Origin: Vitrella brassicaformis CCMP3155
Lineage: Eukaryota; Protista; Chromerida
Assembly (NCBI GenBank): GCA_001179505.1
Contig: CDMY01000176.1
Span: 112,933-176,932, forward strand
Direction: 5' to 3'
DNA length: 64,000 nucleotides
The notes beneath the pieces were generated by a model. It saw only the letters and a program-made list of their open reading frames with translations. It ran no database searches and was not told the origin of the DNA. Below, piece after piece: positions 36,369 to 48,356 of this stretch. The translations under genes and the position numbers were made by a program. The stretch's first letter is position 1. Each line of letters opens with the position of its first letter.

Positions 36369-37751
36369 ATGACGCGCCCCGAGGTCCACCCGAGGCGGCA
36401 GCTGCACGTGTCGGTCCTCACCATAGGTTTCCTGTACATCTTCCTCGAGTCCTTCACCCACACCCTCATCATCCCCATGGTCCCGCAAGTGCTCCCCCAC
36501 CTCACGCACACGGCGTACTCCATCCTCATCTCATCCAGAGCCTTCGCCACCGTCTTCCTGGTGCTGCCCGCAGGCGCGCTGACCGACAGGGTGGGCTGGC
36601 GGCGGCTGCTGATGCTGCCGCTGCTGCTGCAGATGGCGGGGGCGGTGATGTTCTTTGCCTACCCCAACTATGGGCTTTATCTGATGGCCCGGGTCGTCCA
36701 GGGCATTGCATCCTCCTTTGGGAACGTGGTGGCCCTTACGGGGGCAGCATCCACCCACACAGAGGAGAACAGGGGAGCGGCGTTCGGGGTGGTGCTGATG
36801 GGGGACTTCGGCTACTCGGTCGGCTCGACGCTGGGCGGCATTCTGTTCGACGCCGGGGGGCATCGGCTGCTGTTCGGGGTGCTGCTGATGATTATTGTGT
36901 CGTTCAGCGCTTTGGTCATTCTGCTGGTGCCGTGTCTACCGCCTGACCTGCAGCAAGAGGGAGGGGCTGCTGAAGGTGGAGAGGGGAGGAGTGAGAAAGG
37001 GGAGGTGCGGGAGAGAGGGGGTGGGGATGACGACTTGGGGCTGCTGGCGATGGCGCGGAACTTCCACCTCAATGTGACGCTGTATGGCATCTGGTGAGCC
37101 GTTTGTTCTGGGCGGGCGGCTGTGAATGCATGCAATGTGTGCAGATGATCTATGTGTCATGACATGGCATGGCATGGCATGGCTAGGTGTGGGTGGGGTT
37201 GTTTCATGGCGTCGCTGTCCTGGATGCCCCGCTACTGGGAGAAGGAGCTCCGCTTCTCAGCCACTAGAGCCGGTGTCCTCCTCAACCCCGCAACCATCGC
37301 ACGAGTACCCCCATCCCTCCCTCCCCCGATCTATATTTTTTTATGTCTCCCTTTCCTCCTCTCTGTGTCTGGTCTGCACTGCATCCCATCCACACAGCTG
37401 CTGGCCGCCCCGGTGATGGGCTTCCTCGTCAGCTACTGCCGTCTCCCGCCACAGCTCGCCCTTGCGTGTGCCAACCTGCTGTGCGGGGTGTCCTCTCTTC
37501 TACTGCTGGCCTTCCCGTCGGCCATAGCGCAGGCGTGCATCCTGGCTCTGCAGGGGTGGGGGACAGCAGCGGTGGACAGCGGTGGTTTGGTGACGGTGGT
37601 GAAGATAGTGCTGGAGGAGCGGGGGGTGGGGCGGGTGGGGACGGGGTATGCCCTCGAGGACGTGGCCTACAATGGGGGGATCATTTGGGGGCCGATCATC
37701 GTGGGCGGGGTGGTCCATCTTACTGACGACTACTGGTCAGAGAGAGGAACA

Positions 37752-37789
<38 letters not shown>

Positions 37790-38530
37790 CGGAGACACAT
37801 GTTCTTGGATGTGTCTCCGATTGTTGTCTGGATGCCTGGATGCAGGCTTGGTTTCTTCTGCATGGCGTTGCTGGCCTTCACCGGGAGCGCCCTCGTCTTC
37901 TACTCTTGGTCCACCTACCTCCCCCCGCCCGCCCGCTCTCCATCTATTCACCCCTGTCTCTCTGAGGAGGACACGGAGGGCCTCCTGCGCCGCCCCTCAC
38001 ACCACTCACGCGTCACACACTCTTCTGACGACTCGGGATCATCACCGAGCCCTCCTGTCAGCAAGCGGAACTCTTACCATCTGCGGGTCATGGACGAAGA
38101 CCATTACGGTGGGGGAGGGGGGTGGGCTGTGCTGGGTGGTGACCAGAGGAGGGCGGTCGGCAAGTCGATTCACGCGACGGTATATGGGAAGGTTCAGAGC
38201 ACGTCGCTGCTGCCTGTGGACGAGAACAGCGAGAGCACCGACAGCGAGACGGCGGACAGCGGAATGATAGAGATGGCAACGAGTGGTGGAGATGGGGGCC
38301 CCCACCGGCACCAACATGCGCACCACCAGCACCAGCACCAGCATGACAAGAGGGTGTCACTGGTGTGGTCGCCGAGACAGTCGTACGGGCACGACAGTGG
38401 GGAGGATGGGGCTGGTGGTGGTGGTGGTGAGGGTGAGGGTCGGCGCGTGTCTAGGGTGCGGACACAGCGGCTGAGTGTGTCGTCTGTGTTGCTCAGCAGT
38501 GGCATGGAAAGAAGACTCACTGTGCAATGA
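36369..38530 (+). CDS. Major facilitator superfamily transporter (DHA1/SLC18 vesicular amine transporter-like)
   Basis: MFS motif A GALTDRVGWRR, ARVVQGIASS, ENRGAAFG, multiple TM helices and a long disordered C-tail. Confidence 0.88.
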
Positions 38531-38707
38531 CTGACATGACATGGCACGACTTGACTGCATTCATTGACACACAATGATGCATTGGATTCTCATGTCTCAA
38601 GTACCTGAGTCACTCGCCTCGCCCAAAACACATATCAACACACAAACCCACACACACCCATCCTCCCACGCCAGCACTGCACCTTCCTGAACCCTCACTA
38701 TAATCAG

Positions 38708-40518
38708 TCAGTAGCCCTTCACATTGACCAGCGGCTGCAGCCGATGGACCACTTGCACCAGGCTCGCTTGGTTGCGCATAACCTCTCCCAGGTCCTTGTA
38801 CGCCGTGGGGGCCTCGTCCCTGACTTTTGGGTTCGTGTCGCACACAATGCCCTTCATCGACTGCACAAACTCACGCTGATCGACACACCGACACACACAC
38901 ACAGGTGAGCGGTTTGTTGGCTTTGGAGGCTTATTCACTCACTTGTGAGATGTGCTTGACGGCGGCTGTGCGGGACATCCTGCGTCCTGCCCCGTGTGAG
39001 CATGACTGCCAGCTGAGTGAGTTGCCCTTGCCCTCCACGATGTATGTGCCCGTGCCCATCGACCCGGGGATGATGCCCAGCTCCCCTGCACGGTCAGACA
39101 CACACAGGCCCGGGCCGAACACACGTGTGTGTGTGTGTGTGCGTGCGGTGCGGTGTGCTGCTGTCGTTCCTACCCGCCTTTGCTGACGTGGCGCCCTTGC
39201 GTGTGACGTAGAGATCCTCAGTCCGCTTCTCACCTGAGCACCACAGCACACAAGTCACGGGCCTGTGTGGCCGGGAGGTGTGTGTATGTGTGTGTGCGTG
39301 TGTGTGTGTGTGTCGGGAGGTGTGGGTGTCCACCTGTGTGAGGGTCGGTGTAGGTGCAGGTTTCGCATGTGCAGTAGTTGTGGTGGATGTTGACCGTCGA
39401 CGACCAGTCCGGCACCTTCCGAGTCACCTCCTGCATCACCTGCATCAATCGCATCAATCGGGGACGCCGGCCATTCATTCCTCGGTCGTGGCACTGACAC
39501 GACACACCTCAGTGATTGATCGACATGACATACATACCCTTGCGAAGGCCTTGATCATGAAGGAGCGGTTCATGAAGGCGTAGGCCTGGCAGAAACGCAT
39601 GTCGGCTAGGTAGTCCTGGCCCTCCTTGGTGTCCAGGTACAGAAAACTCAGACCTGCACCCATTCATCCGGCCATCCATCCATCGGTGAGAATGCACACA
39701 CACTTTCTCCGGCTCTCTCCCTCCCCTGCTGACTGACTGACCTTCTTTTGTGCCGCCCGTCTGCTTGGCCGCCAGTTGGTCGTAGTGCCGGGCGGTGATG
39801 TTGCCGATGTTCCTGCTGCCCGAGTGCAGCAGCATCCAAACATTATCGCTCTCGTCGTAGACCAGCTCGATGAAGTGGTTCCCGCCGCCTAGCGTCCCCA
39901 GCTGCAGCGTGTGTCTCCTGTCAAAGGTGTCCCGTATCCACGACGTCGGCTCACGCTCGGACATCAGCGACTTGGTCGCCTCCCGCGCCCCTGCTGGCTC
40001 TCTGTCATGGGAGTCAAACCCTGTGGACAGACAGCAGCCGGATGATAATGCAGCGCAGCAATGGTGTCACCTTCACCGCACCTACCCGTTGGAATGCTCA
40101 TCTTCAGCCCCTTCTGTATCTTTGCGAGCTGCCCGTCGGTGAGGTGGCTTCGCTTGAGGCCGCGGAGGGGCACAGCGCACATCCCGCAGCCGATGTCCAC
40201 ACCCACGGCGTTGGGGCAGATGGCGTCCCTTGCTGCATGAGCGGGTCGACACACACACAGTCACACACGAACACACACAGGGAGGGAGGTATTTATGCGC
40301 CGTGCCGCTGCAGCCAGGAATCTTTTCTCCAGGACGGGACGGCTGCTTGCGTACTTGCGAAGACTGATCCGATTGTGGCGCCTTTACCGAGGTGCACATC
40401 CGGCATGGCCGCCACGAAGCCCACCACAAAGGGCTTCTCCGCAAGGGCCACCAGCTGCCGATACGTGGCGTCATCATAGTCACTCGTGTAGCTGACACAC
40501 ACCCGCACAGACCACACA

Positions 40519-40549
<31 letters not shown>

Positions 40550-41114
40550 GGAGGGAGTGACCACGTGTGTGTTCGGAATGTGTGCCTCAGGCGAGTGCCC
40601 CTCCCTCAGCCTCTCACATGTACACAGGGACGCCCCTGGTCTCCACGACAATCGGCAACTCCAACTCCCCATCCCCCAGCTGCCGTCCACCCCGCTCTTG
40701 AGCACTCTCCCTCTTCACCATGGCACGGCCCTCCTCCCGTCCGGCCACTTCGACTTCCACCTCCACCTCCATCCCATCGTCCTCGACGGCATCGTCATTG
40801 CAGGTCTTGAAGTTCGTGGTCGGCTCGTCCTCTGCTGCCAGCAGTCGGTCTCTCTCACTCGCAATGGACGAGGTGCCGTGATGCGCGGGCTGCCGACGGC
40901 GGTGCTGATGATTGTGGGAGGAGTAGTGCCGGTGGTGACACAGTCCACAATAGGGCGGCGGGAAGGCGCTGATGGGATGGGTGGTGGGGAGATGGAGGCA
41001 TCTGATGAACTGCTCAACCGCAGCTTGAGCCGGGTGTTTGTGATACGACCGGGAGTCGGCAATAAGACTCCTGGCGGACGAAATCTGATGCCACGGACGC
41101 TGAATGCGCTGCAT
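38708..41114 (-). CDS. rtcB: Bacterial (E. coli)-type RtcB RNA 2',3'-cyclic phosphate/3'-phosphate-5'-OH ligase with an approximately 150-aa N-terminal extension
   Basis: AMPDVHLGKGATIGSV, PNAVGVDIGCGM, LGTLGGGNHFIE, LHSGSRNIG, IHHNY, TRKGAT, GIIPGSMG, SCSHGAGRRMSR and DEAPTAYKD..VKG*. All known catalytic residues are present. Confidence 0.96.
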
Positions 41115-41302
41115 CAGTAGACGTGGGCGTGGCTCACCTTTTAGTTTCCTGCGAGCTTAGAAATGGCGAGCTCATGATTCCCGAATTCCCCCTTAACTCG
41201 TCCACGACCAGCAGTGTCAAGATGACCGAGATCCCCCCACGAGAAAGGGGGCAATCAATCTTTTAACCCTCCTCTGACGCTCCATCCCCTTCCATCCATG
41301 CC

Positions 41303-44300
41303 ATGGAGCAAGAGCCATCGACCTCTCTGGGCGCTCGGCGCCTCCTGCCCCTCTCAATCGAGGCCCCGCCACCATCCCGCTCCATCACTGGCAGCTCATC
41401 AGCCGGGCTGGGGAGGCTGCCCACGACCCCGTCGGCAGCTTATGACCACCTGTTGAGCTACGAGCGGGCCACGATCTGGCTGCACTATGCCAGGTACGCC
41501 GAGGAGTACGTGCCGGAGGACTGCTTCCAGACGGCCATGCAGGTGCGGCTGTTCAAGTGGCGGCGGCGGTGCCTGCCGCTCATCAGGGGTGTGTTCTTTG
41601 TCTACTTGGTGGCTGCCTTTGTGGAGTGGCCGTCGTGGTGTCTGGAGAGGGAGTGCGGGCCGCCCAGCAATGTGCTGCGGTCGGATTTGCCGCTGTGGCC
41701 GCCGTGGGTGACGCGGCTGATTGAGCTGGGCTGTCTGCTCTGCATACTTGCCTACTACATCCTTGCCGGAAAAACGCGTAGGCCTGCCTGCCTGCCTGCT
41801 GTGGGCACAAGCGAACACGTGACACCTCTGTGTGCTGTGCTACATTGTTGACTTGATGCAGTTCGGTTCTTCCCCTGGACATGGTGCCTGCTGGTGCTGA
41901 CCGCTCTGTCCCTCCTCGACGTGAGCACGGCGTGCTTCAACACGATCGGCATCGTGCCCACCACCTTCAGGCTGTCGCGGCTGCTGCGGCCACTGATCTT
42001 CTGCCTGGGGTCCTTGACGATGCGGACGACGGTGATGCGCATCGCGCAGACGGTGCCCAACACTATTCAGGTGTTCGGGATCATCTTCCTGTCGGTGCTG
42101 GTGTTCGGCTGGGTGGGGGTGATATTCTTCAGCGGCACCGGGGGACACGCCGAGTTCCCCACCTTCAAGTACTCAGTCAAGTCGCTTTTCGTCTCACTCA
42201 CCACTGCAAACTTCCCACAGGTGACCTGACGTCTGTGCTGTGTGTGTCCGCTGTCCGTCCAGTCCATTGGGGTGTCCCTCCACGGTCTGTCTGTCTGTCT
42301 ACTGGGGTGTGCTCGTGTGTGTGTCAATCAGGTGATGCTGAGTGCGTACGCCGACAACCGTGCCGCGCCGATCTTCTTCGTGCTCTTCACCTTCCTGGTC
42401 ATGACCCTCCTCATGAACGTCCTCCTGGCGGCCATCTACAACAGCTACAAGGAGGTGCTCCGCGAGTGGGTCCTGCAGTTCTACCTCAACCGCAACCGGG
42501 CCCTCCAGGCCGCCTTCGACCTCCTCAAGAACAAAGACGGCGTCGTCACCATGGACGAGTGGTGCGCCTTCTTCTCTCACTGGAGCGGTGGGGATAGGGA
42601 AGGCGGTGGAGGTGGGGTGATGCACGTGAAGCGGGGGAGGCGGCTGTTCCGGTGTCTGGACACCGACCACAATGGGGACTTGACCGAAGACGAGTTCATG
42701 CTCCTCATACGCGTTATGACTGAGAAAGGTCGGTCGGGGACACACAGACACACACACACACACAGAGAGAGAGATGGATGGATGGATGTGTGTGGTGTGT
42801 GTCCACCAGATGTGGTGGTGTTGCGCTACCCTCCCGAGAGCAAGGCGCGGATCCGCCGGCTGGTGGCCATCTGCCTCAGCAGACGGTTCGACATACTCAT
42901 CGACGTCCTCATCACCATCTCGGTCATCATCACATGCACACAGGTGACGGACGTCTCAGGACTCTCTCTCCCTCCCTCCCTCCCTCCCTCTCTTACCCAC
43001 ACCGACCTCTCTGTCTGTCTGTCTCTGTGTGCGTCAGACAATGATGTTCGTCGAGGCGTCCACCGCCCTGCATCAGCACACCACGACGGGCGAGGGGCAG
43101 CCGCCCGACCACCACCCCGTGGCGTGTTTCTACTCGTCAGCAGCGCTCTACTACCTCCAGCTGGCGCTCTCCGCCACCTACGCGGCAGAGCTCGCCTTCA
43201 AGATCAGCGTCCTGGGCTTCGAGCGCTTCTGGAAGATACACCCCCTCAGAAACAGGTTAATGGGTGACCTGACTGACCTGCCACACACGGATTGATGGCG
43301 TCTCTTTCTCGCCCATTCTCTCTCTCTCTCTCTCTCTCCCTGTCTCTCTGTCTCTCTGTCTGTGTGTCTGTGTGTGCAGGTTTGACCTTTATGCGGTGAT
43401 TCCCCTGGTGCTGGCCGAGGCGCTGTTTCTGATTGAGGGCCGCGGGGGCGTGGGCCACGTGTTTGTGGAGCGGGGCGAGGGCGCCGCGGGGTGGTGCATG
43501 TCCGGCCTGGGAAGGTTCCTGGCCTTCCTGAGGATGCAGCGGGGCATCAGGCTGCTCTTCAACTTCGAAAGGCTGCAGACATTTGTAAGCCCTGCAGGCA
43601 CTGCACTGCACACACCGAGGGAGGGAGGGGAAGGCATAATGACTGACGTCACGTCCATGTGTGTGGATGTGTGTGTGGTGCATTGCAGGCGACTGAGCTG
43701 GCCTCAGTGTTGACGAGCTTCAACACGATCGCGGGGCTGCTGATAGTGGTCTTCTACGTGTACGCCACGGTGGGCATCCAGCTGTTCGGCGGCCGCATGA
43801 CGCTCGACAAGGTCGCCAACCGCATCATGGGCGCCGTCAACACCGTCACTGATGCCAACGTCACCGTCACCATGCCCCTCAGTGTCGAGGTCAATGGCAC
43901 CTCGTCAGCGTCACTGCCGCCTTTGCTGGAGCACGCCACTTTGGAGGCGCTGCTCAACTTCAACGACTTCTACTCGTCGTTGATCACGCTGATCGTGCTC
44001 ATGATCAACGGCTGGCATGACACGCTCGAGGTGCGCACCGCACGTGTGTGGGGGGTGGGTGGGGAGGCCTATTGGGTGGACCAGGAGGGAGGGAGTTGTG
44101 TGTTGTGTGATGTGTGATGTGTGTGTCAGATCTATCTGGAGGAGACGTCTGAGTGGTGCGGGCTGTTCTTCGCGAGTTTCTACATCCTGTGTGTCCTGAT
44201 CGTGCTCAACTGTTTCATGGCCCTCATACTCGAGGCCTTCGACCACGTACGCACCTCCACCCACCTCCACCACCAGCACACCACACACCGAACGAACGAC

Positions 44301-48238: not shown

Positions 48239-48356
48239 ATCGCGGTGTTCCGCTCATTCGCATCATTCTTTCGCCTTTTACTAAAGAATGCCGTGCGTGG
48301 GACACAGTTAACGCGTCTGACGCAATTTTTGCACACCCATCGCGCCCTCGGGCGTA
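48239..48356 (+). ncRNA. U5: U5 spliceosomal snRNA
   Basis: Invariant loop I in its stem, CATTCTTTC-GCCTTTTAC-TAAAGAATG (about 48264-48290). Stem GTGTTCCGC/GCGTGGGACAC, Sm site AATTTTTG at 48324-48331 and 3' stem-loop CGCC-CTCG-GGCG. Order and spacing match metazoan U5. Ends are approximate. Confidence 0.93.

What the first reader, a model, noticed from the sequence alone, without database searches (positions are those of the whole stretch)
38708..41114. Nuclear, intron-containing E. coli-type RtcB with a mitochondrial-transit-like leader
Seen: all catalytic motifs are intact (DIGCG, GNHF, HSGSR, HHNY, SHGAGR), and the sequence style (MPDVHLGKGATIG, DEAPxAYK) is the short bacterial RtcB type rather than the archaeal/metazoan HSPC117 type. 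It has about 150 extra N-terminal residues, starting MQRIQRPWHQISSARSLIADSRSY, which is rich in Arg/Ser/Ala, poor in acidic residues and has an RSY cleavage-like motif. Established: bacterial RtcB repairs broken tRNA and rRNA, and myzozoan mitochondria have highly fragmented rRNAs (dinoflagellates also trans-splice cox3). Inference: this could be an organellar RNA ligation or repair enzyme acting on fragmented mitochondrial transcripts.
Basis: partly seen in the sequence, partly recalled or inferred. Interest (0 to 1): 0.78.

Follow-up and report, generated by a model that had tools for sequence, protein, structure and literature searches.

The report
Alga's bacterial-type RNA-joining enzyme, probably mitochondrial
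This alga (Vitrella) expresses an intact nuclear gene for a bacterial-style RNA-joining enzyme (RtcB) with a long floppy front end that looks like a mitochondrial address tag; relatives in related algae and parasites carry similar tags, but nothing links it to stitching fragmented mitochondrial RNAs.

Summary
Window 38708-41114 (minus strand) is a 9-exon GT-AG gene for a 550-aa RtcB. Spliced RNA contigs in four runs match the model. All catalytic residues are intact, and the protein aligns end to end with E. coli RtcB (40% identity).

It is Vitrella brassicaformis CEL93553.1, already in public databases. The public model's first exon and intron are not supported by RNA.

The enzyme is not HSPC117-type. 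It belongs to a well-supported clade that also holds Chromera, Digyalum, Perkinsus, dinoflagellates, green algae, diatoms and, as bacteria, Leptospiraceae. Two introns match a green alga's in position and phase, so the gene is old in eukaryotes.

Most clade members have N-terminal extensions, mostly basic and acid-poor. A few have plastid-type signal-peptide leaders. The Vitrella leader has no signal peptide, is basic at the start and is predicted disordered. Mitochondrial import is my best guess (about 0.55) and is untested.

The proposed link to fragmented mitochondrial RNAs is weak:
- Homologues occur in algae that I take, from general knowledge, to have ordinary mitochondrial rRNAs.
- No core apicomplexan appeared among the best hits.
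- Toxoplasma mitoribosomes use unligated rRNA pieces.
- Dinoflagellate cox3 precursors have the wrong ends for RtcB.

Mitochondrial RtcB is already published for Euglenozoa. This is a new member of a known kind.

The parts
41115..41149 (-). 5' UTR as far as RNA contigs reach; it contains no AUG
   Evidence: Contigs end at 41149 (X8), 41130 (X7) and 41089 (X1). An in-frame stop lies 14 codons upstream of the ATG.
40618..41114 (-). Exon 1: start codon, the whole N-terminal extension and the first residues of the RtcB core
   Evidence: No Pfam match. AlphaFold pLDDT below 50 for residues 1-135.
40845..41114 (-). Leader, basic part (aa 1-90): net charge +8, 11 Arg, 13 His, 11 Ser, no hydrophobic signal-peptide core
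   Evidence: highest 15-residue hydropathy in the extension is 0.98; hydrophobic moment of residues 1-11 is 0.80.
40668..40844 (-). Acidic low-complexity linker (aa 91-149; aa 91-165 have net charge -12, with an EVEVEVEV run)
40355..40491 (-). Exon 2 (MPDVHLGKGATIG)
40086..40232 (-). Exon 3 (VDIGCGM; Asp224 and Cys227). The intron after it has the same position and phase as in Perkinsus and Coccomyxa.
39742..40020 (-). Exon 4 (GNHF, HSGSR; Asn308, His309, His326, Arg330)
39538..39653 (-). Exon 5
39334..39439 (-). Exon 6 (HHNY; His411, His412)
39174..39233 (-). Exon 7 (60 nt)
   Evidence: A 58-nt piece lies between two joints in the contigs.
38943..39085 (-). Exon 8 (SHGAGR; His478 aligns with the E. 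coli His337 nucleophile; Arg482, Arg486). The intron after it is shared with Coccomyxa.
38708..38875 (-). Exon 9 with the stop codon (DEAPTAYK, C-terminus KGY)
38543..38707 (-). 3' UTR as far as contigs reach
   Evidence: Contigs end at 38543-38572.
41071..41175 (-). First exon (41175-41138) and 67-nt intron (41137-41071) of the public model CEL93553.1; not supported by RNA
   Evidence: One search shows the differing N-terminus. In one search the contigs run unspliced through 41071-41137, no joint is listed there, and bin depths show 41150-41195 is uncovered in X7 and X8.

Best explanation
This is an expressed nuclear gene of Vitrella brassicaformis for a catalytically intact, short bacterial-type RtcB. 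RtcB is a GTP/Mn2+-dependent ligase that seals RNA ends carrying 3'-phosphate or 2',3'-cyclic phosphate and 5'-OH, through a His-GMP intermediate (here His478).

It belongs to an old, intron-bearing eukaryotic clade found in myzozoans, green algae and diatoms. Most members of that clade carry organelle-type N-terminal leaders.

The Vitrella protein has a 149-aa disordered extension. Its basic, acid-poor start most likely acts as a mitochondrial presequence. If so, the enzyme would work in the mitochondrion as an RNA repair or end-sealing ligase, for example on cleaved imported tRNAs or rRNA pieces, rather than as the stitcher of fragmented rRNAs.

Shown: gene structure, expression, start codon, family membership, intact active site, clade membership and the nature of the extension. 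Inferred: mitochondrial import and the repair role.
For: **Gene and expression**
- The 9-exon model is confirmed by spliced contigs in four runs.
- The mRNA reaches 35 nt upstream of ATG 41114 and has no earlier AUG.

**Family and active site**
- Pfam RtcB on the exons.
- 40.4% identity to E. coli RtcB residues 12-408, E 5e-90.
- All E. coli active-site positions are conserved: D75, C78, N167, H168, H185, R189, H280/281, H337, R341, R345.
- The AlphaFold core has pLDDT above 95 and matches RtcB structures.

**Clade**
- The clade has SH-aLRT support of 99. A myzozoan subclade (support 90) holds Chromera, Digyalum, Perkinsus and dinoflagellates.
- Introns 3 and 8 share position and phase with Coccomyxa, and intron 3 also with Perkinsus.

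**Leaders**
- 91 of 125 complete clade members have an extension of at least 12 aa. Of these, 67 are basic and acid-poor.
- Chromera_B (65% core identity, the closest relative) has a short classic Arg/Ser-rich leader. Dinoflagellate orthologues start M-R...ARRG.
- The Vitrella leader has 4 Arg and 1 Asp in its first 25 aa, net +8 over 90 aa and no hydrophobic core.
- Plastid import in chromerids requires a signal peptide plus transit peptide (PMC6723311).

**Precedent**
- Bacterial-type RtcB is in or predicted for mitochondria of trypanosomes and diplonemids (PMC12699882, PMC13247085).
Against: - No targeting predictor (TargetP, MitoFates, DeepLoc) and no localisation data were available. The call rests on composition and on relatives.
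- The extension is unusually long and is His-rich, then acidic. It is unlike the short leaders of the orthologues and does not align with the conserved dinoflagellate motif.
- Internal Met114 and Met132 could give a leaderless isoform.
- No RNA substrate with 3'-P/5'-OH ends is known in chromerid mitochondria.
- I could not test whether Vitrella has a separate HSPC117-type ligase, so a cytosolic or nuclear tRNA-splicing role is not excluded.
Confidence: 0.5

Rival explanations
1. It is a cytosolic or nuclear RNA ligase. The N-terminal 149 aa would be a disordered low-complexity tail with no import function. The enzyme would repair or splice cytosolic or nuclear RNAs, possibly tRNA introns.
For: The extension is disordered, His-rich and then acidic. 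It does not align with the orthologues' presequence motif. 16 of 91 extended relatives have leaders that are neither basic nor hydrophobic. The presence of an HSPC117-type ligase in Vitrella could not be checked.
Against: Nearly all eukaryotic clade members have N-terminal extensions that the bacterial members lack. The closest relatives have classic basic leaders. The first 19 residues have no acidic residue and 3 Arg.
Confidence: 0.3
2. One reading: a mitochondrial ligase that joins pieces of fragmented mitochondrial transcripts (rRNA fragments or trans-spliced mRNAs) in myzozoans.
For: The probable mitochondrial leader. The clade is present across dinoflagellates, perkinsids and chromerids. 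In diplonemids an RtcB is the proposed joiner of mitochondrial gene-module transcripts (PMC12699882).
Against: - The same clade occurs in trebouxiophyte and ulvophyte green algae, Chlorokybus and diatoms.
- No core apicomplexan was among the best 120 hits of the Chromera or Digyalum queries.
- The Toxoplasma mitoribosome is built from more than 50 separate rRNAs (PMC11742926).
- cox3 trans-splicing is confined to dinoflagellates (PMC9550989). Its precursors are oligoadenylated and were ligated by T4 RNA ligase untreated (PMC3577742). I infer 5'-P/3'-OH ends, which are not RtcB substrates.
Confidence: 0.08
3. It is imported into the plastid rather than the mitochondrion.
For: The Chromera paralogue Cvel_21903 has a signal peptide plus an S/P/R-rich region. 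Some diatom members have signal peptides with an A-x-A|F motif. The clade is concentrated in plastid-bearing lineages.
Against: Neither start variant has a hydrophobic signal peptide (highest 12-residue hydropathy is 0.88). Chromerid plastid import needs a bipartite leader (PMC6723311). There is no room for an upstream exon: the RNA 5' end is at about 41149 and a divergent gene starts at about 41196.
Confidence: 0.05
4. It is bacterial contamination or a dead gene.
For: The sequence style is bacterial.
Against: The gene has eight spliceosomal introns, two of them shared with other eukaryotes. Spliced transcripts occur in four runs. Its neighbours are eukaryotic genes on a 177-kb scaffold. The open reading frame and active site are intact.
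Confidence: 0.01

Closest known systems
Escherichia coli RtcB (b3421), the RNA repair ligase of the rtcBA operon
   Same: The same short architecture of about 400 aa. It aligns end to end at 40% identity, and all active-site residues match, including the His337 equivalent.
   Different: The Vitrella gene is nuclear, has 8 introns and encodes a 149-aa N-terminal extension. It sits in a different, well-supported clade from E. coli RtcB. There is no operon context with RtcA or RtcR.
Mitochondrial bacterial-type RtcB of Euglenozoa (Diplonema RTCB1; Trypanosoma RtcB)
   Same: A nuclear-encoded bacterial-type RtcB with an N-terminal leader, either predicted or shown to be in mitochondria (PMC12699882, PMC13247085).
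   Different: Those proteins group with E. coli RtcB1 ('clade 1' in PMC12699882). The Vitrella clade is separate from E. coli in my trees, so it is probably a separate origin. The Discoba sequences themselves were not in my trees.
HSPC117/RTCB and archaeal RtcB (tRNA-splicing ligase)
   Same: The same fold and catalytic chemistry. Foldseek gives probability 1.0 and a target-normalised TM-score of 0.62-0.69.
   Different: Identity is only 22-25%. Sequence matches cover only the C-terminal half, E 1e-22 to 1e-28. The solved chains are 481-530 aa, longer than the roughly 400-aa Vitrella core. From general knowledge, those enzymes also work with archease.
Chromera velia Cvel_18579 and Cvel_21903; Digyalum, Perkinsus and dinoflagellate orthologues
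   Same: The same myzozoan subclade, with 53-65% core identity and N-terminal leaders.
   Different: The Vitrella extension is much longer than in most (149 aa against roughly 13-80). Chromera has two paralogues with different leader types, while only one Vitrella protein appeared among the best hits.

Membership tests
RtcB family (Pfam PF01139, 3'-phosphate/5'-hydroxy nucleic acid ligase) | Sequence match to the family profile over the whole domain | tested here: met
   Six exons hit PF01139, and together they cover profile positions 1-426. The public protein P0155 carries PF01139.
RtcB family (Pfam PF01139, 3'-phosphate/5'-hydroxy nucleic acid ligase) | Metal-binding and guanylylation residues (E. 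coli D75, C78, N167, H168, H185, R189, H281, H337, R341; residue roles from established knowledge of Shuman-lab work) | tested here: met
   All are conserved: D224, C227, N308, H309, H326, R330, H412, H478, R482. They are invariant in a 50-sequence alignment.
RtcB family (Pfam PF01139, 3'-phosphate/5'-hydroxy nucleic acid ligase) | RtcB fold | tested here: met
   The AlphaFold core has pLDDT above 95. The top 16 Foldseek PDB hits are all RtcB or RTCB structures.
RtcB family (Pfam PF01139, 3'-phosphate/5'-hydroxy nucleic acid ligase) | GTP/Mn2+-dependent sealing of 3'-P (or 2',3'-cyclic phosphate) and 5'-OH ends | not testable with these tools
   This needs a biochemical assay.
HSPC117/archaeal-type RtcB | Groups by sequence with archaeal and metazoan tRNA-splicing ligases | tested here: not met
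   PDB archaeal and human chains match only the C-terminal half, at E 1e-22 to 1e-28, with 22-25% identity. E. coli RtcB matches at 40% over its full length.
E. coli RtcB1 clade (the clade that holds the Discoba mitochondrial RTCB1) | Branches with E. coli RtcB in a family tree | tested here: not met
   E. coli RtcB lies outside the clade (support 99) that holds Vitrella. NCBIfam has no model that even E. coli RtcB passes, so it gives no test.
Mitochondrial matrix presequence | Basic, hydroxylated, acid-poor N-terminus able to form an amphipathic helix | tested here: met
   The first 25 aa have 4 Arg and 1 Asp. Net charge is +4 over 40 aa. The hydrophobic moment of residues 1-11 is 0.80. These are crude measures, not a trained predictor.
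Mitochondrial matrix presequence | Processing-peptidase site (Arg at -2 or -3) | tested here: inconclusive
   ARS|L and RSY|H fit an R-3 pattern by eye. No cleavage predictor was available.
Mitochondrial matrix presequence | Import into mitochondria | not testable with these tools
   This needs tagging or organelle proteomics.
Bipartite plastid-targeting leader of chromerids | N-terminal ER signal peptide followed by a transit peptide (PMC6723311) | tested here: not met
   There is no hydrophobic segment: the highest 12-residue hydropathy is 0.88, against 2.61 in Chromera Cvel_21903.

The most novel reading that the evidence does not exclude
The myzozoan branch of this RtcB clade could be the still-unknown protein ligase behind non-canonical RNA joining in myzozoan mitochondria, such as dinoflagellate cox3 trans-splicing. 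In chromerids it would act on a so far undetected mitochondrial RNA-joining event.
Probability: 0.07. Interest if true: 0.85.

Novelty: new member of a known kind. Interest (0 to 1): 0.42.

Why it matters
Mitochondrial RtcB has so far been discussed only for Euglenozoa. This analysis shows a second, separate clade of bacterial-type RtcB that is old in eukaryotes, because introns are shared between an alveolate and a green alga.

The clade is widespread in myzozoans, green algae and diatoms, and most members carry organelle-type leaders. Some paralogues have plastid-type leaders instead. That makes "organellar RNA end-sealing or repair in algae" a concrete hypothesis that can be tested.

The analysis also corrects the start of the public Vitrella gene model. 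It does not, as it stands, explain fragmented mitochondrial rRNAs or trans-splicing.

Tried and rejected
- **PDB search with one exon.** The 92-aa exon 4 gave no hit. The full protein gave only distant archaeal, human and Thermus types.
- **NCBIfam.** No model passes its cut-off, not even for E. coli RtcB itself, so it cannot serve as a membership test.
- **Literature.** No paper holds both 'RtcB' and 'Vitrella'. One broad six-term search was badly designed and uninformative. The PhyloFisher hit was a false match to 'rtc_binner'. Popow 2012 says nothing on alveolates. The text of the Perkinsus mitochondrial complexome paper does not mention an RNA ligase. A Plasmodium and RtcB search found nothing relevant.
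- **Supplements of the diplonemid paper.** They hold no Vitrella or Chromera entries.
- **Homology of the leader.** I looked for homology between the Vitrella leader and the conserved dinoflagellate presequence motif. MAFFT does not align them, so I claim none.
- **HSPC117-type RtcB and archease in Vitrella.** I could not search for these. No tool searches this genome by name or by a query I could reference, and earlier scan notes hold nothing on them.
- **Search with the whole spliced protein.** This was not possible by reference. It was solved by finding the public protein P0155 through a Chromera homologue.
Full report
**Observation**

The region holds a gene on the minus strand. From the ORF pieces and the sequence I built a 9-exon model with eight GT-AG introns. 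The exons are 41114-40618, 40491-40355, 40232-40086, 40020-39742, 39653-39538, 39439-39334, 39233-39174, 39085-38943 and 38875-38708. The model is in frame and gives 550 aa.

Six of eight exon translations tested hit Pfam RtcB (PF01139), together covering profile positions 1-426. Exon 1 (165 aa) and exon 6 match no family.

**Expression and the true start**

Four public runs hold spliced contigs that lack exactly these introns. Seven joints are listed. The eighth follows from contig length: exons 2-8 sum to 988 nt in both the contig and the model. These runs therefore contain RNA.

The contigs reach 41149 (X8), 41130 (X7) and 41089 (X1). That is up to 35 nt upstream of ATG 41114, with no AUG in between. 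An in-frame stop lies 14 codons upstream.

The public protein of this gene is Vitrella brassicaformis CCMP3155 CEL93553.1 (UniProt A0A0G4EDZ8, here P0155). It is identical except for its first 13 residues, which take the place of the first 15 of my model. That model starts at ATG 41175 and removes a 67-nt intron (41137-41071).

The RNA contigs run unspliced through that stretch, and no joint is listed there. The bin depths of X7 and X8 are fully accounted for by the listed contigs, so 41150-41195 is uncovered.

A divergent ion-channel gene starts at about 41196-41236 on the plus strand. That leaves no room for a further upstream exon.

**What the protein is**

It aligns with E. coli K-12 RtcB residues 12-408 at 40.4% identity, E 5e-90. 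The E. coli active-site positions D75, C78, N167, H168, H185, R189, H280/281, H337, R341 and R345 are all conserved. In Vitrella they are D224, C227, N308, H309, H326, R330, H411/412, H478, R482 and R486. The residue roles come from established knowledge of the E. coli enzyme.

AlphaFold on a 50-sequence alignment gives a core with pLDDT above 95. Foldseek matches it only to RtcB and RTCB structures, at 22-25% identity. By sequence, the archaeal, human and Thermus chains match only the C-terminal half, at E 1e-22 to 1e-28.

So it is a short bacterial-type RtcB, not the HSPC117 type.

**Relatives**

An exhaustive search with exon 4 and two word searches, with names, show a large group of homologues at 45-65% identity:
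- Chromera velia, two paralogues: Cvel_18579 (P0157) and Cvel_21903 (P0004).
- The squirmid Digyalum oweni.
- Perkinsus olseni and P. chesapeaki.
- Many dinoflagellates: Prorocentrum, Effrenium, Durusdinium, Symbiodinium, Gymnodinium.
- Green algae: Coccomyxa, Trebouxia, Botryococcus, Bryopsis, Chlorokybus and others.
- Diatoms: Amphora, Entomoneis, Thalassiosira.
- A ciliate, Halteria.
- Among bacteria, Leptospiraceae.

Trees place all of these in one clade, apart from E. coli and other bacterial RtcBs. The trees are FastTree on 163 rows and quick IQ-TREE with a mixture model on 70 rows. Clade support is 99 in both trees (SH-aLRT). Inside it, a myzozoan subclade (support 90) holds Vitrella. 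The order among Vitrella, the two Chromera paralogues and Digyalum is unresolved. The highest core identity is to Chromera_B, at 65%.

No Toxoplasma, Plasmodium, Cryptosporidium or gregarine protein appeared among the best 120 hits of either the Chromera or the Digyalum query. This is not an exhaustive proof of absence.

**Age of the gene in eukaryotes**

I mapped the exons of the Perkinsus, Effrenium and Coccomyxa genes on their genomic loci and compared intron sites on an alignment.
- Vitrella intron 3 lies in phase 1 inside the Gly codon of IPTG|F. It sits at the same site and phase in Perkinsus olseni and in Coccomyxa.
- Intron 8 lies in phase 0 after ...ISQ. It is shared with Coccomyxa.
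- Intron 5 matches Effrenium in site and phase. That gene has about 29 introns, so chance is not negligible.

With 9 Coccomyxa introns over about 1300 possible sites, two exact matches among 7 core introns are far more than the roughly 0.05 expected. The gene therefore spread among eukaryotes as an intron-bearing gene and is not a recent bacterial import.

**The leader**

Relative to E. coli the protein has 149 extra N-terminal residues.
- Residues 1-90 are basic (net +8; 11 Arg, 13 His, 11 Ser).
- The first 19 residues have no acidic residue.
- Residues 1-11 have a high helical hydrophobic moment (0.80).
- Residues 91-165 are acidic (net -12).
- No stretch is hydrophobic enough for a signal peptide.
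- AlphaFold gives pLDDT below 50 for residues 1-135, so it is not a folded domain.

Across the clade, 91 of 125 complete proteins have an extension of at least 12 aa (the median over all 125 is 40 aa). Of the 91, 67 are basic and acid-poor, and 8 have a signal-peptide-like hydrophobic start.

In the myzozoan subclade, Chromera_B starts with a short Arg/Ser-rich leader. Most complete dinoflagellate orthologues start M-R...(A/T)RRG-x-V-x-x-(F/C)-(E/D)-D.

Chromera_A instead has a clear signal peptide followed by an S/P/R-rich stretch. Some diatom members have signal peptides ending in A-x-A|F, the diatom plastid motif. Chromerid plastid import needs such a bipartite leader (PMC6723311), which Vitrella lacks.

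The family thus looks organellar, with mitochondrial-type and plastid-type versions, and the Vitrella protein fits the mitochondrial type. This is inference: I had no trained predictor and no localisation data. MAFFT does not align the Vitrella leader with the dinoflagellate motif.

**Function**

The chemistry (sealing 3'-P or 2',3'-cyclic-P ends to 5'-OH ends through His-GMP) follows from family membership and the intact active site.

- The clade is present in green algae and diatoms, which to my knowledge have conventional mitochondrial rRNAs (I did not check this here). It was not found in core apicomplexans.
- The Toxoplasma mitoribosome assembles from more than 50 separate rRNAs (PMC11742926).
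- cox3 trans-splicing is specific to dinoflagellates (PMC9550989).
- The cox3 precursors are oligoadenylated and were circularised by T4 RNA ligase from otherwise untreated RNA (PMC3577742). From the known requirement of that ligase I infer 5'-P/3'-OH ends, which RtcB does not join.

A general repair role on broken organellar RNAs, as for bacterial RtcB, is the more economical reading.

**Comparison with the known, and novelty**

Nuclear-encoded bacterial-type RtcB in mitochondria is already reported or predicted for trypanosomes and diplonemids, where it groups with E. coli RtcB1 (PMC12699882, PMC13247085). The Vitrella clade is separate from E. coli RtcB in my trees, so it is probably another origin. 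The Discoba sequences were not in my trees.

The gene is in public databases with an automatic name. I found no paper that mentions RtcB together with Vitrella. I class it as a new member of a known kind, of moderate interest.

**Limits**

- I could not test for an HSPC117-type ligase or archease in this genome.
- The tree is a quick search with several long bacterial branches.
- RNA contigs cannot give an exact transcription start.
- Earlier notes of this scan supplied the organism name. I confirmed it through the identical public protein.

Noticed in passing
window 48239-48355 (+): A U5 spliceosomal snRNA gene: Rfam RF00020, 75 bits, full-length model match.
   Followed up: no
window 41071-41175 (-): The public gene model CEL93553.1 uses ATG 41175 plus a 67-nt intron. 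RNA contigs do not cover that ATG and run unspliced through the intron, so the annotated N-terminus (MSSPFLSSQETK...) looks wrong.
   Followed up: yes
P0004 (Chromera Cvel_21903) and P0157 (Cvel_18579): Chromera has two paralogues of this RtcB. One has a short basic mitochondrial-type leader. The other has a signal peptide plus an S/P/R-rich region, which is the plastid-type bipartite pattern. Only one Vitrella protein appeared among the best hits.
   Followed up: partly
P0159, P0160, P0164, P0165, P0168, P0169, P0174, P0187 (dinoflagellate orthologues), residues 1-30: A conserved N-terminal pattern M-R...(A/T)RRG-x-V-x-x-(F/C)-(E/D)-D follows the basic start. It may mark the presequence cleavage site and the mature N-terminus.
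   Followed up: partly
window 40875-40935 (-), aa 60-80; also P0170 residues 50-105: A His/Gln-rich low-complexity stretch sits in the linker of both the Vitrella protein and a metagenome-derived member of the dinoflagellate subclade (P0170). I cannot tell whether this is chance low complexity or a metal-binding tail.
   Followed up: no
P0232, P0242, P0263, P0295 (Leptospiraceae, about 505 aa): Leptospiraceae RtcBs nest inside the otherwise eukaryotic clade. This suggests a transfer between domains, in an unknown direction.
   Followed up: no
window 41196-42300 (+) and 37152-38530 (+): The neighbours are two genes on the plus strand. A divergent ion-transport channel gene (Pfam Ion_trans) has its transcript starting only about 50-90 nt from the RtcB 5' end. 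An MFS-like gene converges on the RtcB 3' end.
   Followed up: partly
L002 (Perkinsus olseni), L004 (Coccomyxa), L003 (Effrenium): Intron positions are shared with the Vitrella gene: intron 3 with Perkinsus and Coccomyxa, intron 8 with Coccomyxa. The Effrenium gene model has about 29 introns, including one of about 32 kb that may be a model error.
   Followed up: yes
window 38882-38903, 39721-39741, 41782-41799: Short stretches (two inside RtcB introns, the third in an intron of the neighbouring channel gene) have many-fold higher summed contig depth and many loose ends in all four runs. They are probably TG/CA-type simple repeats shared with many transcripts.
   Followed up: no
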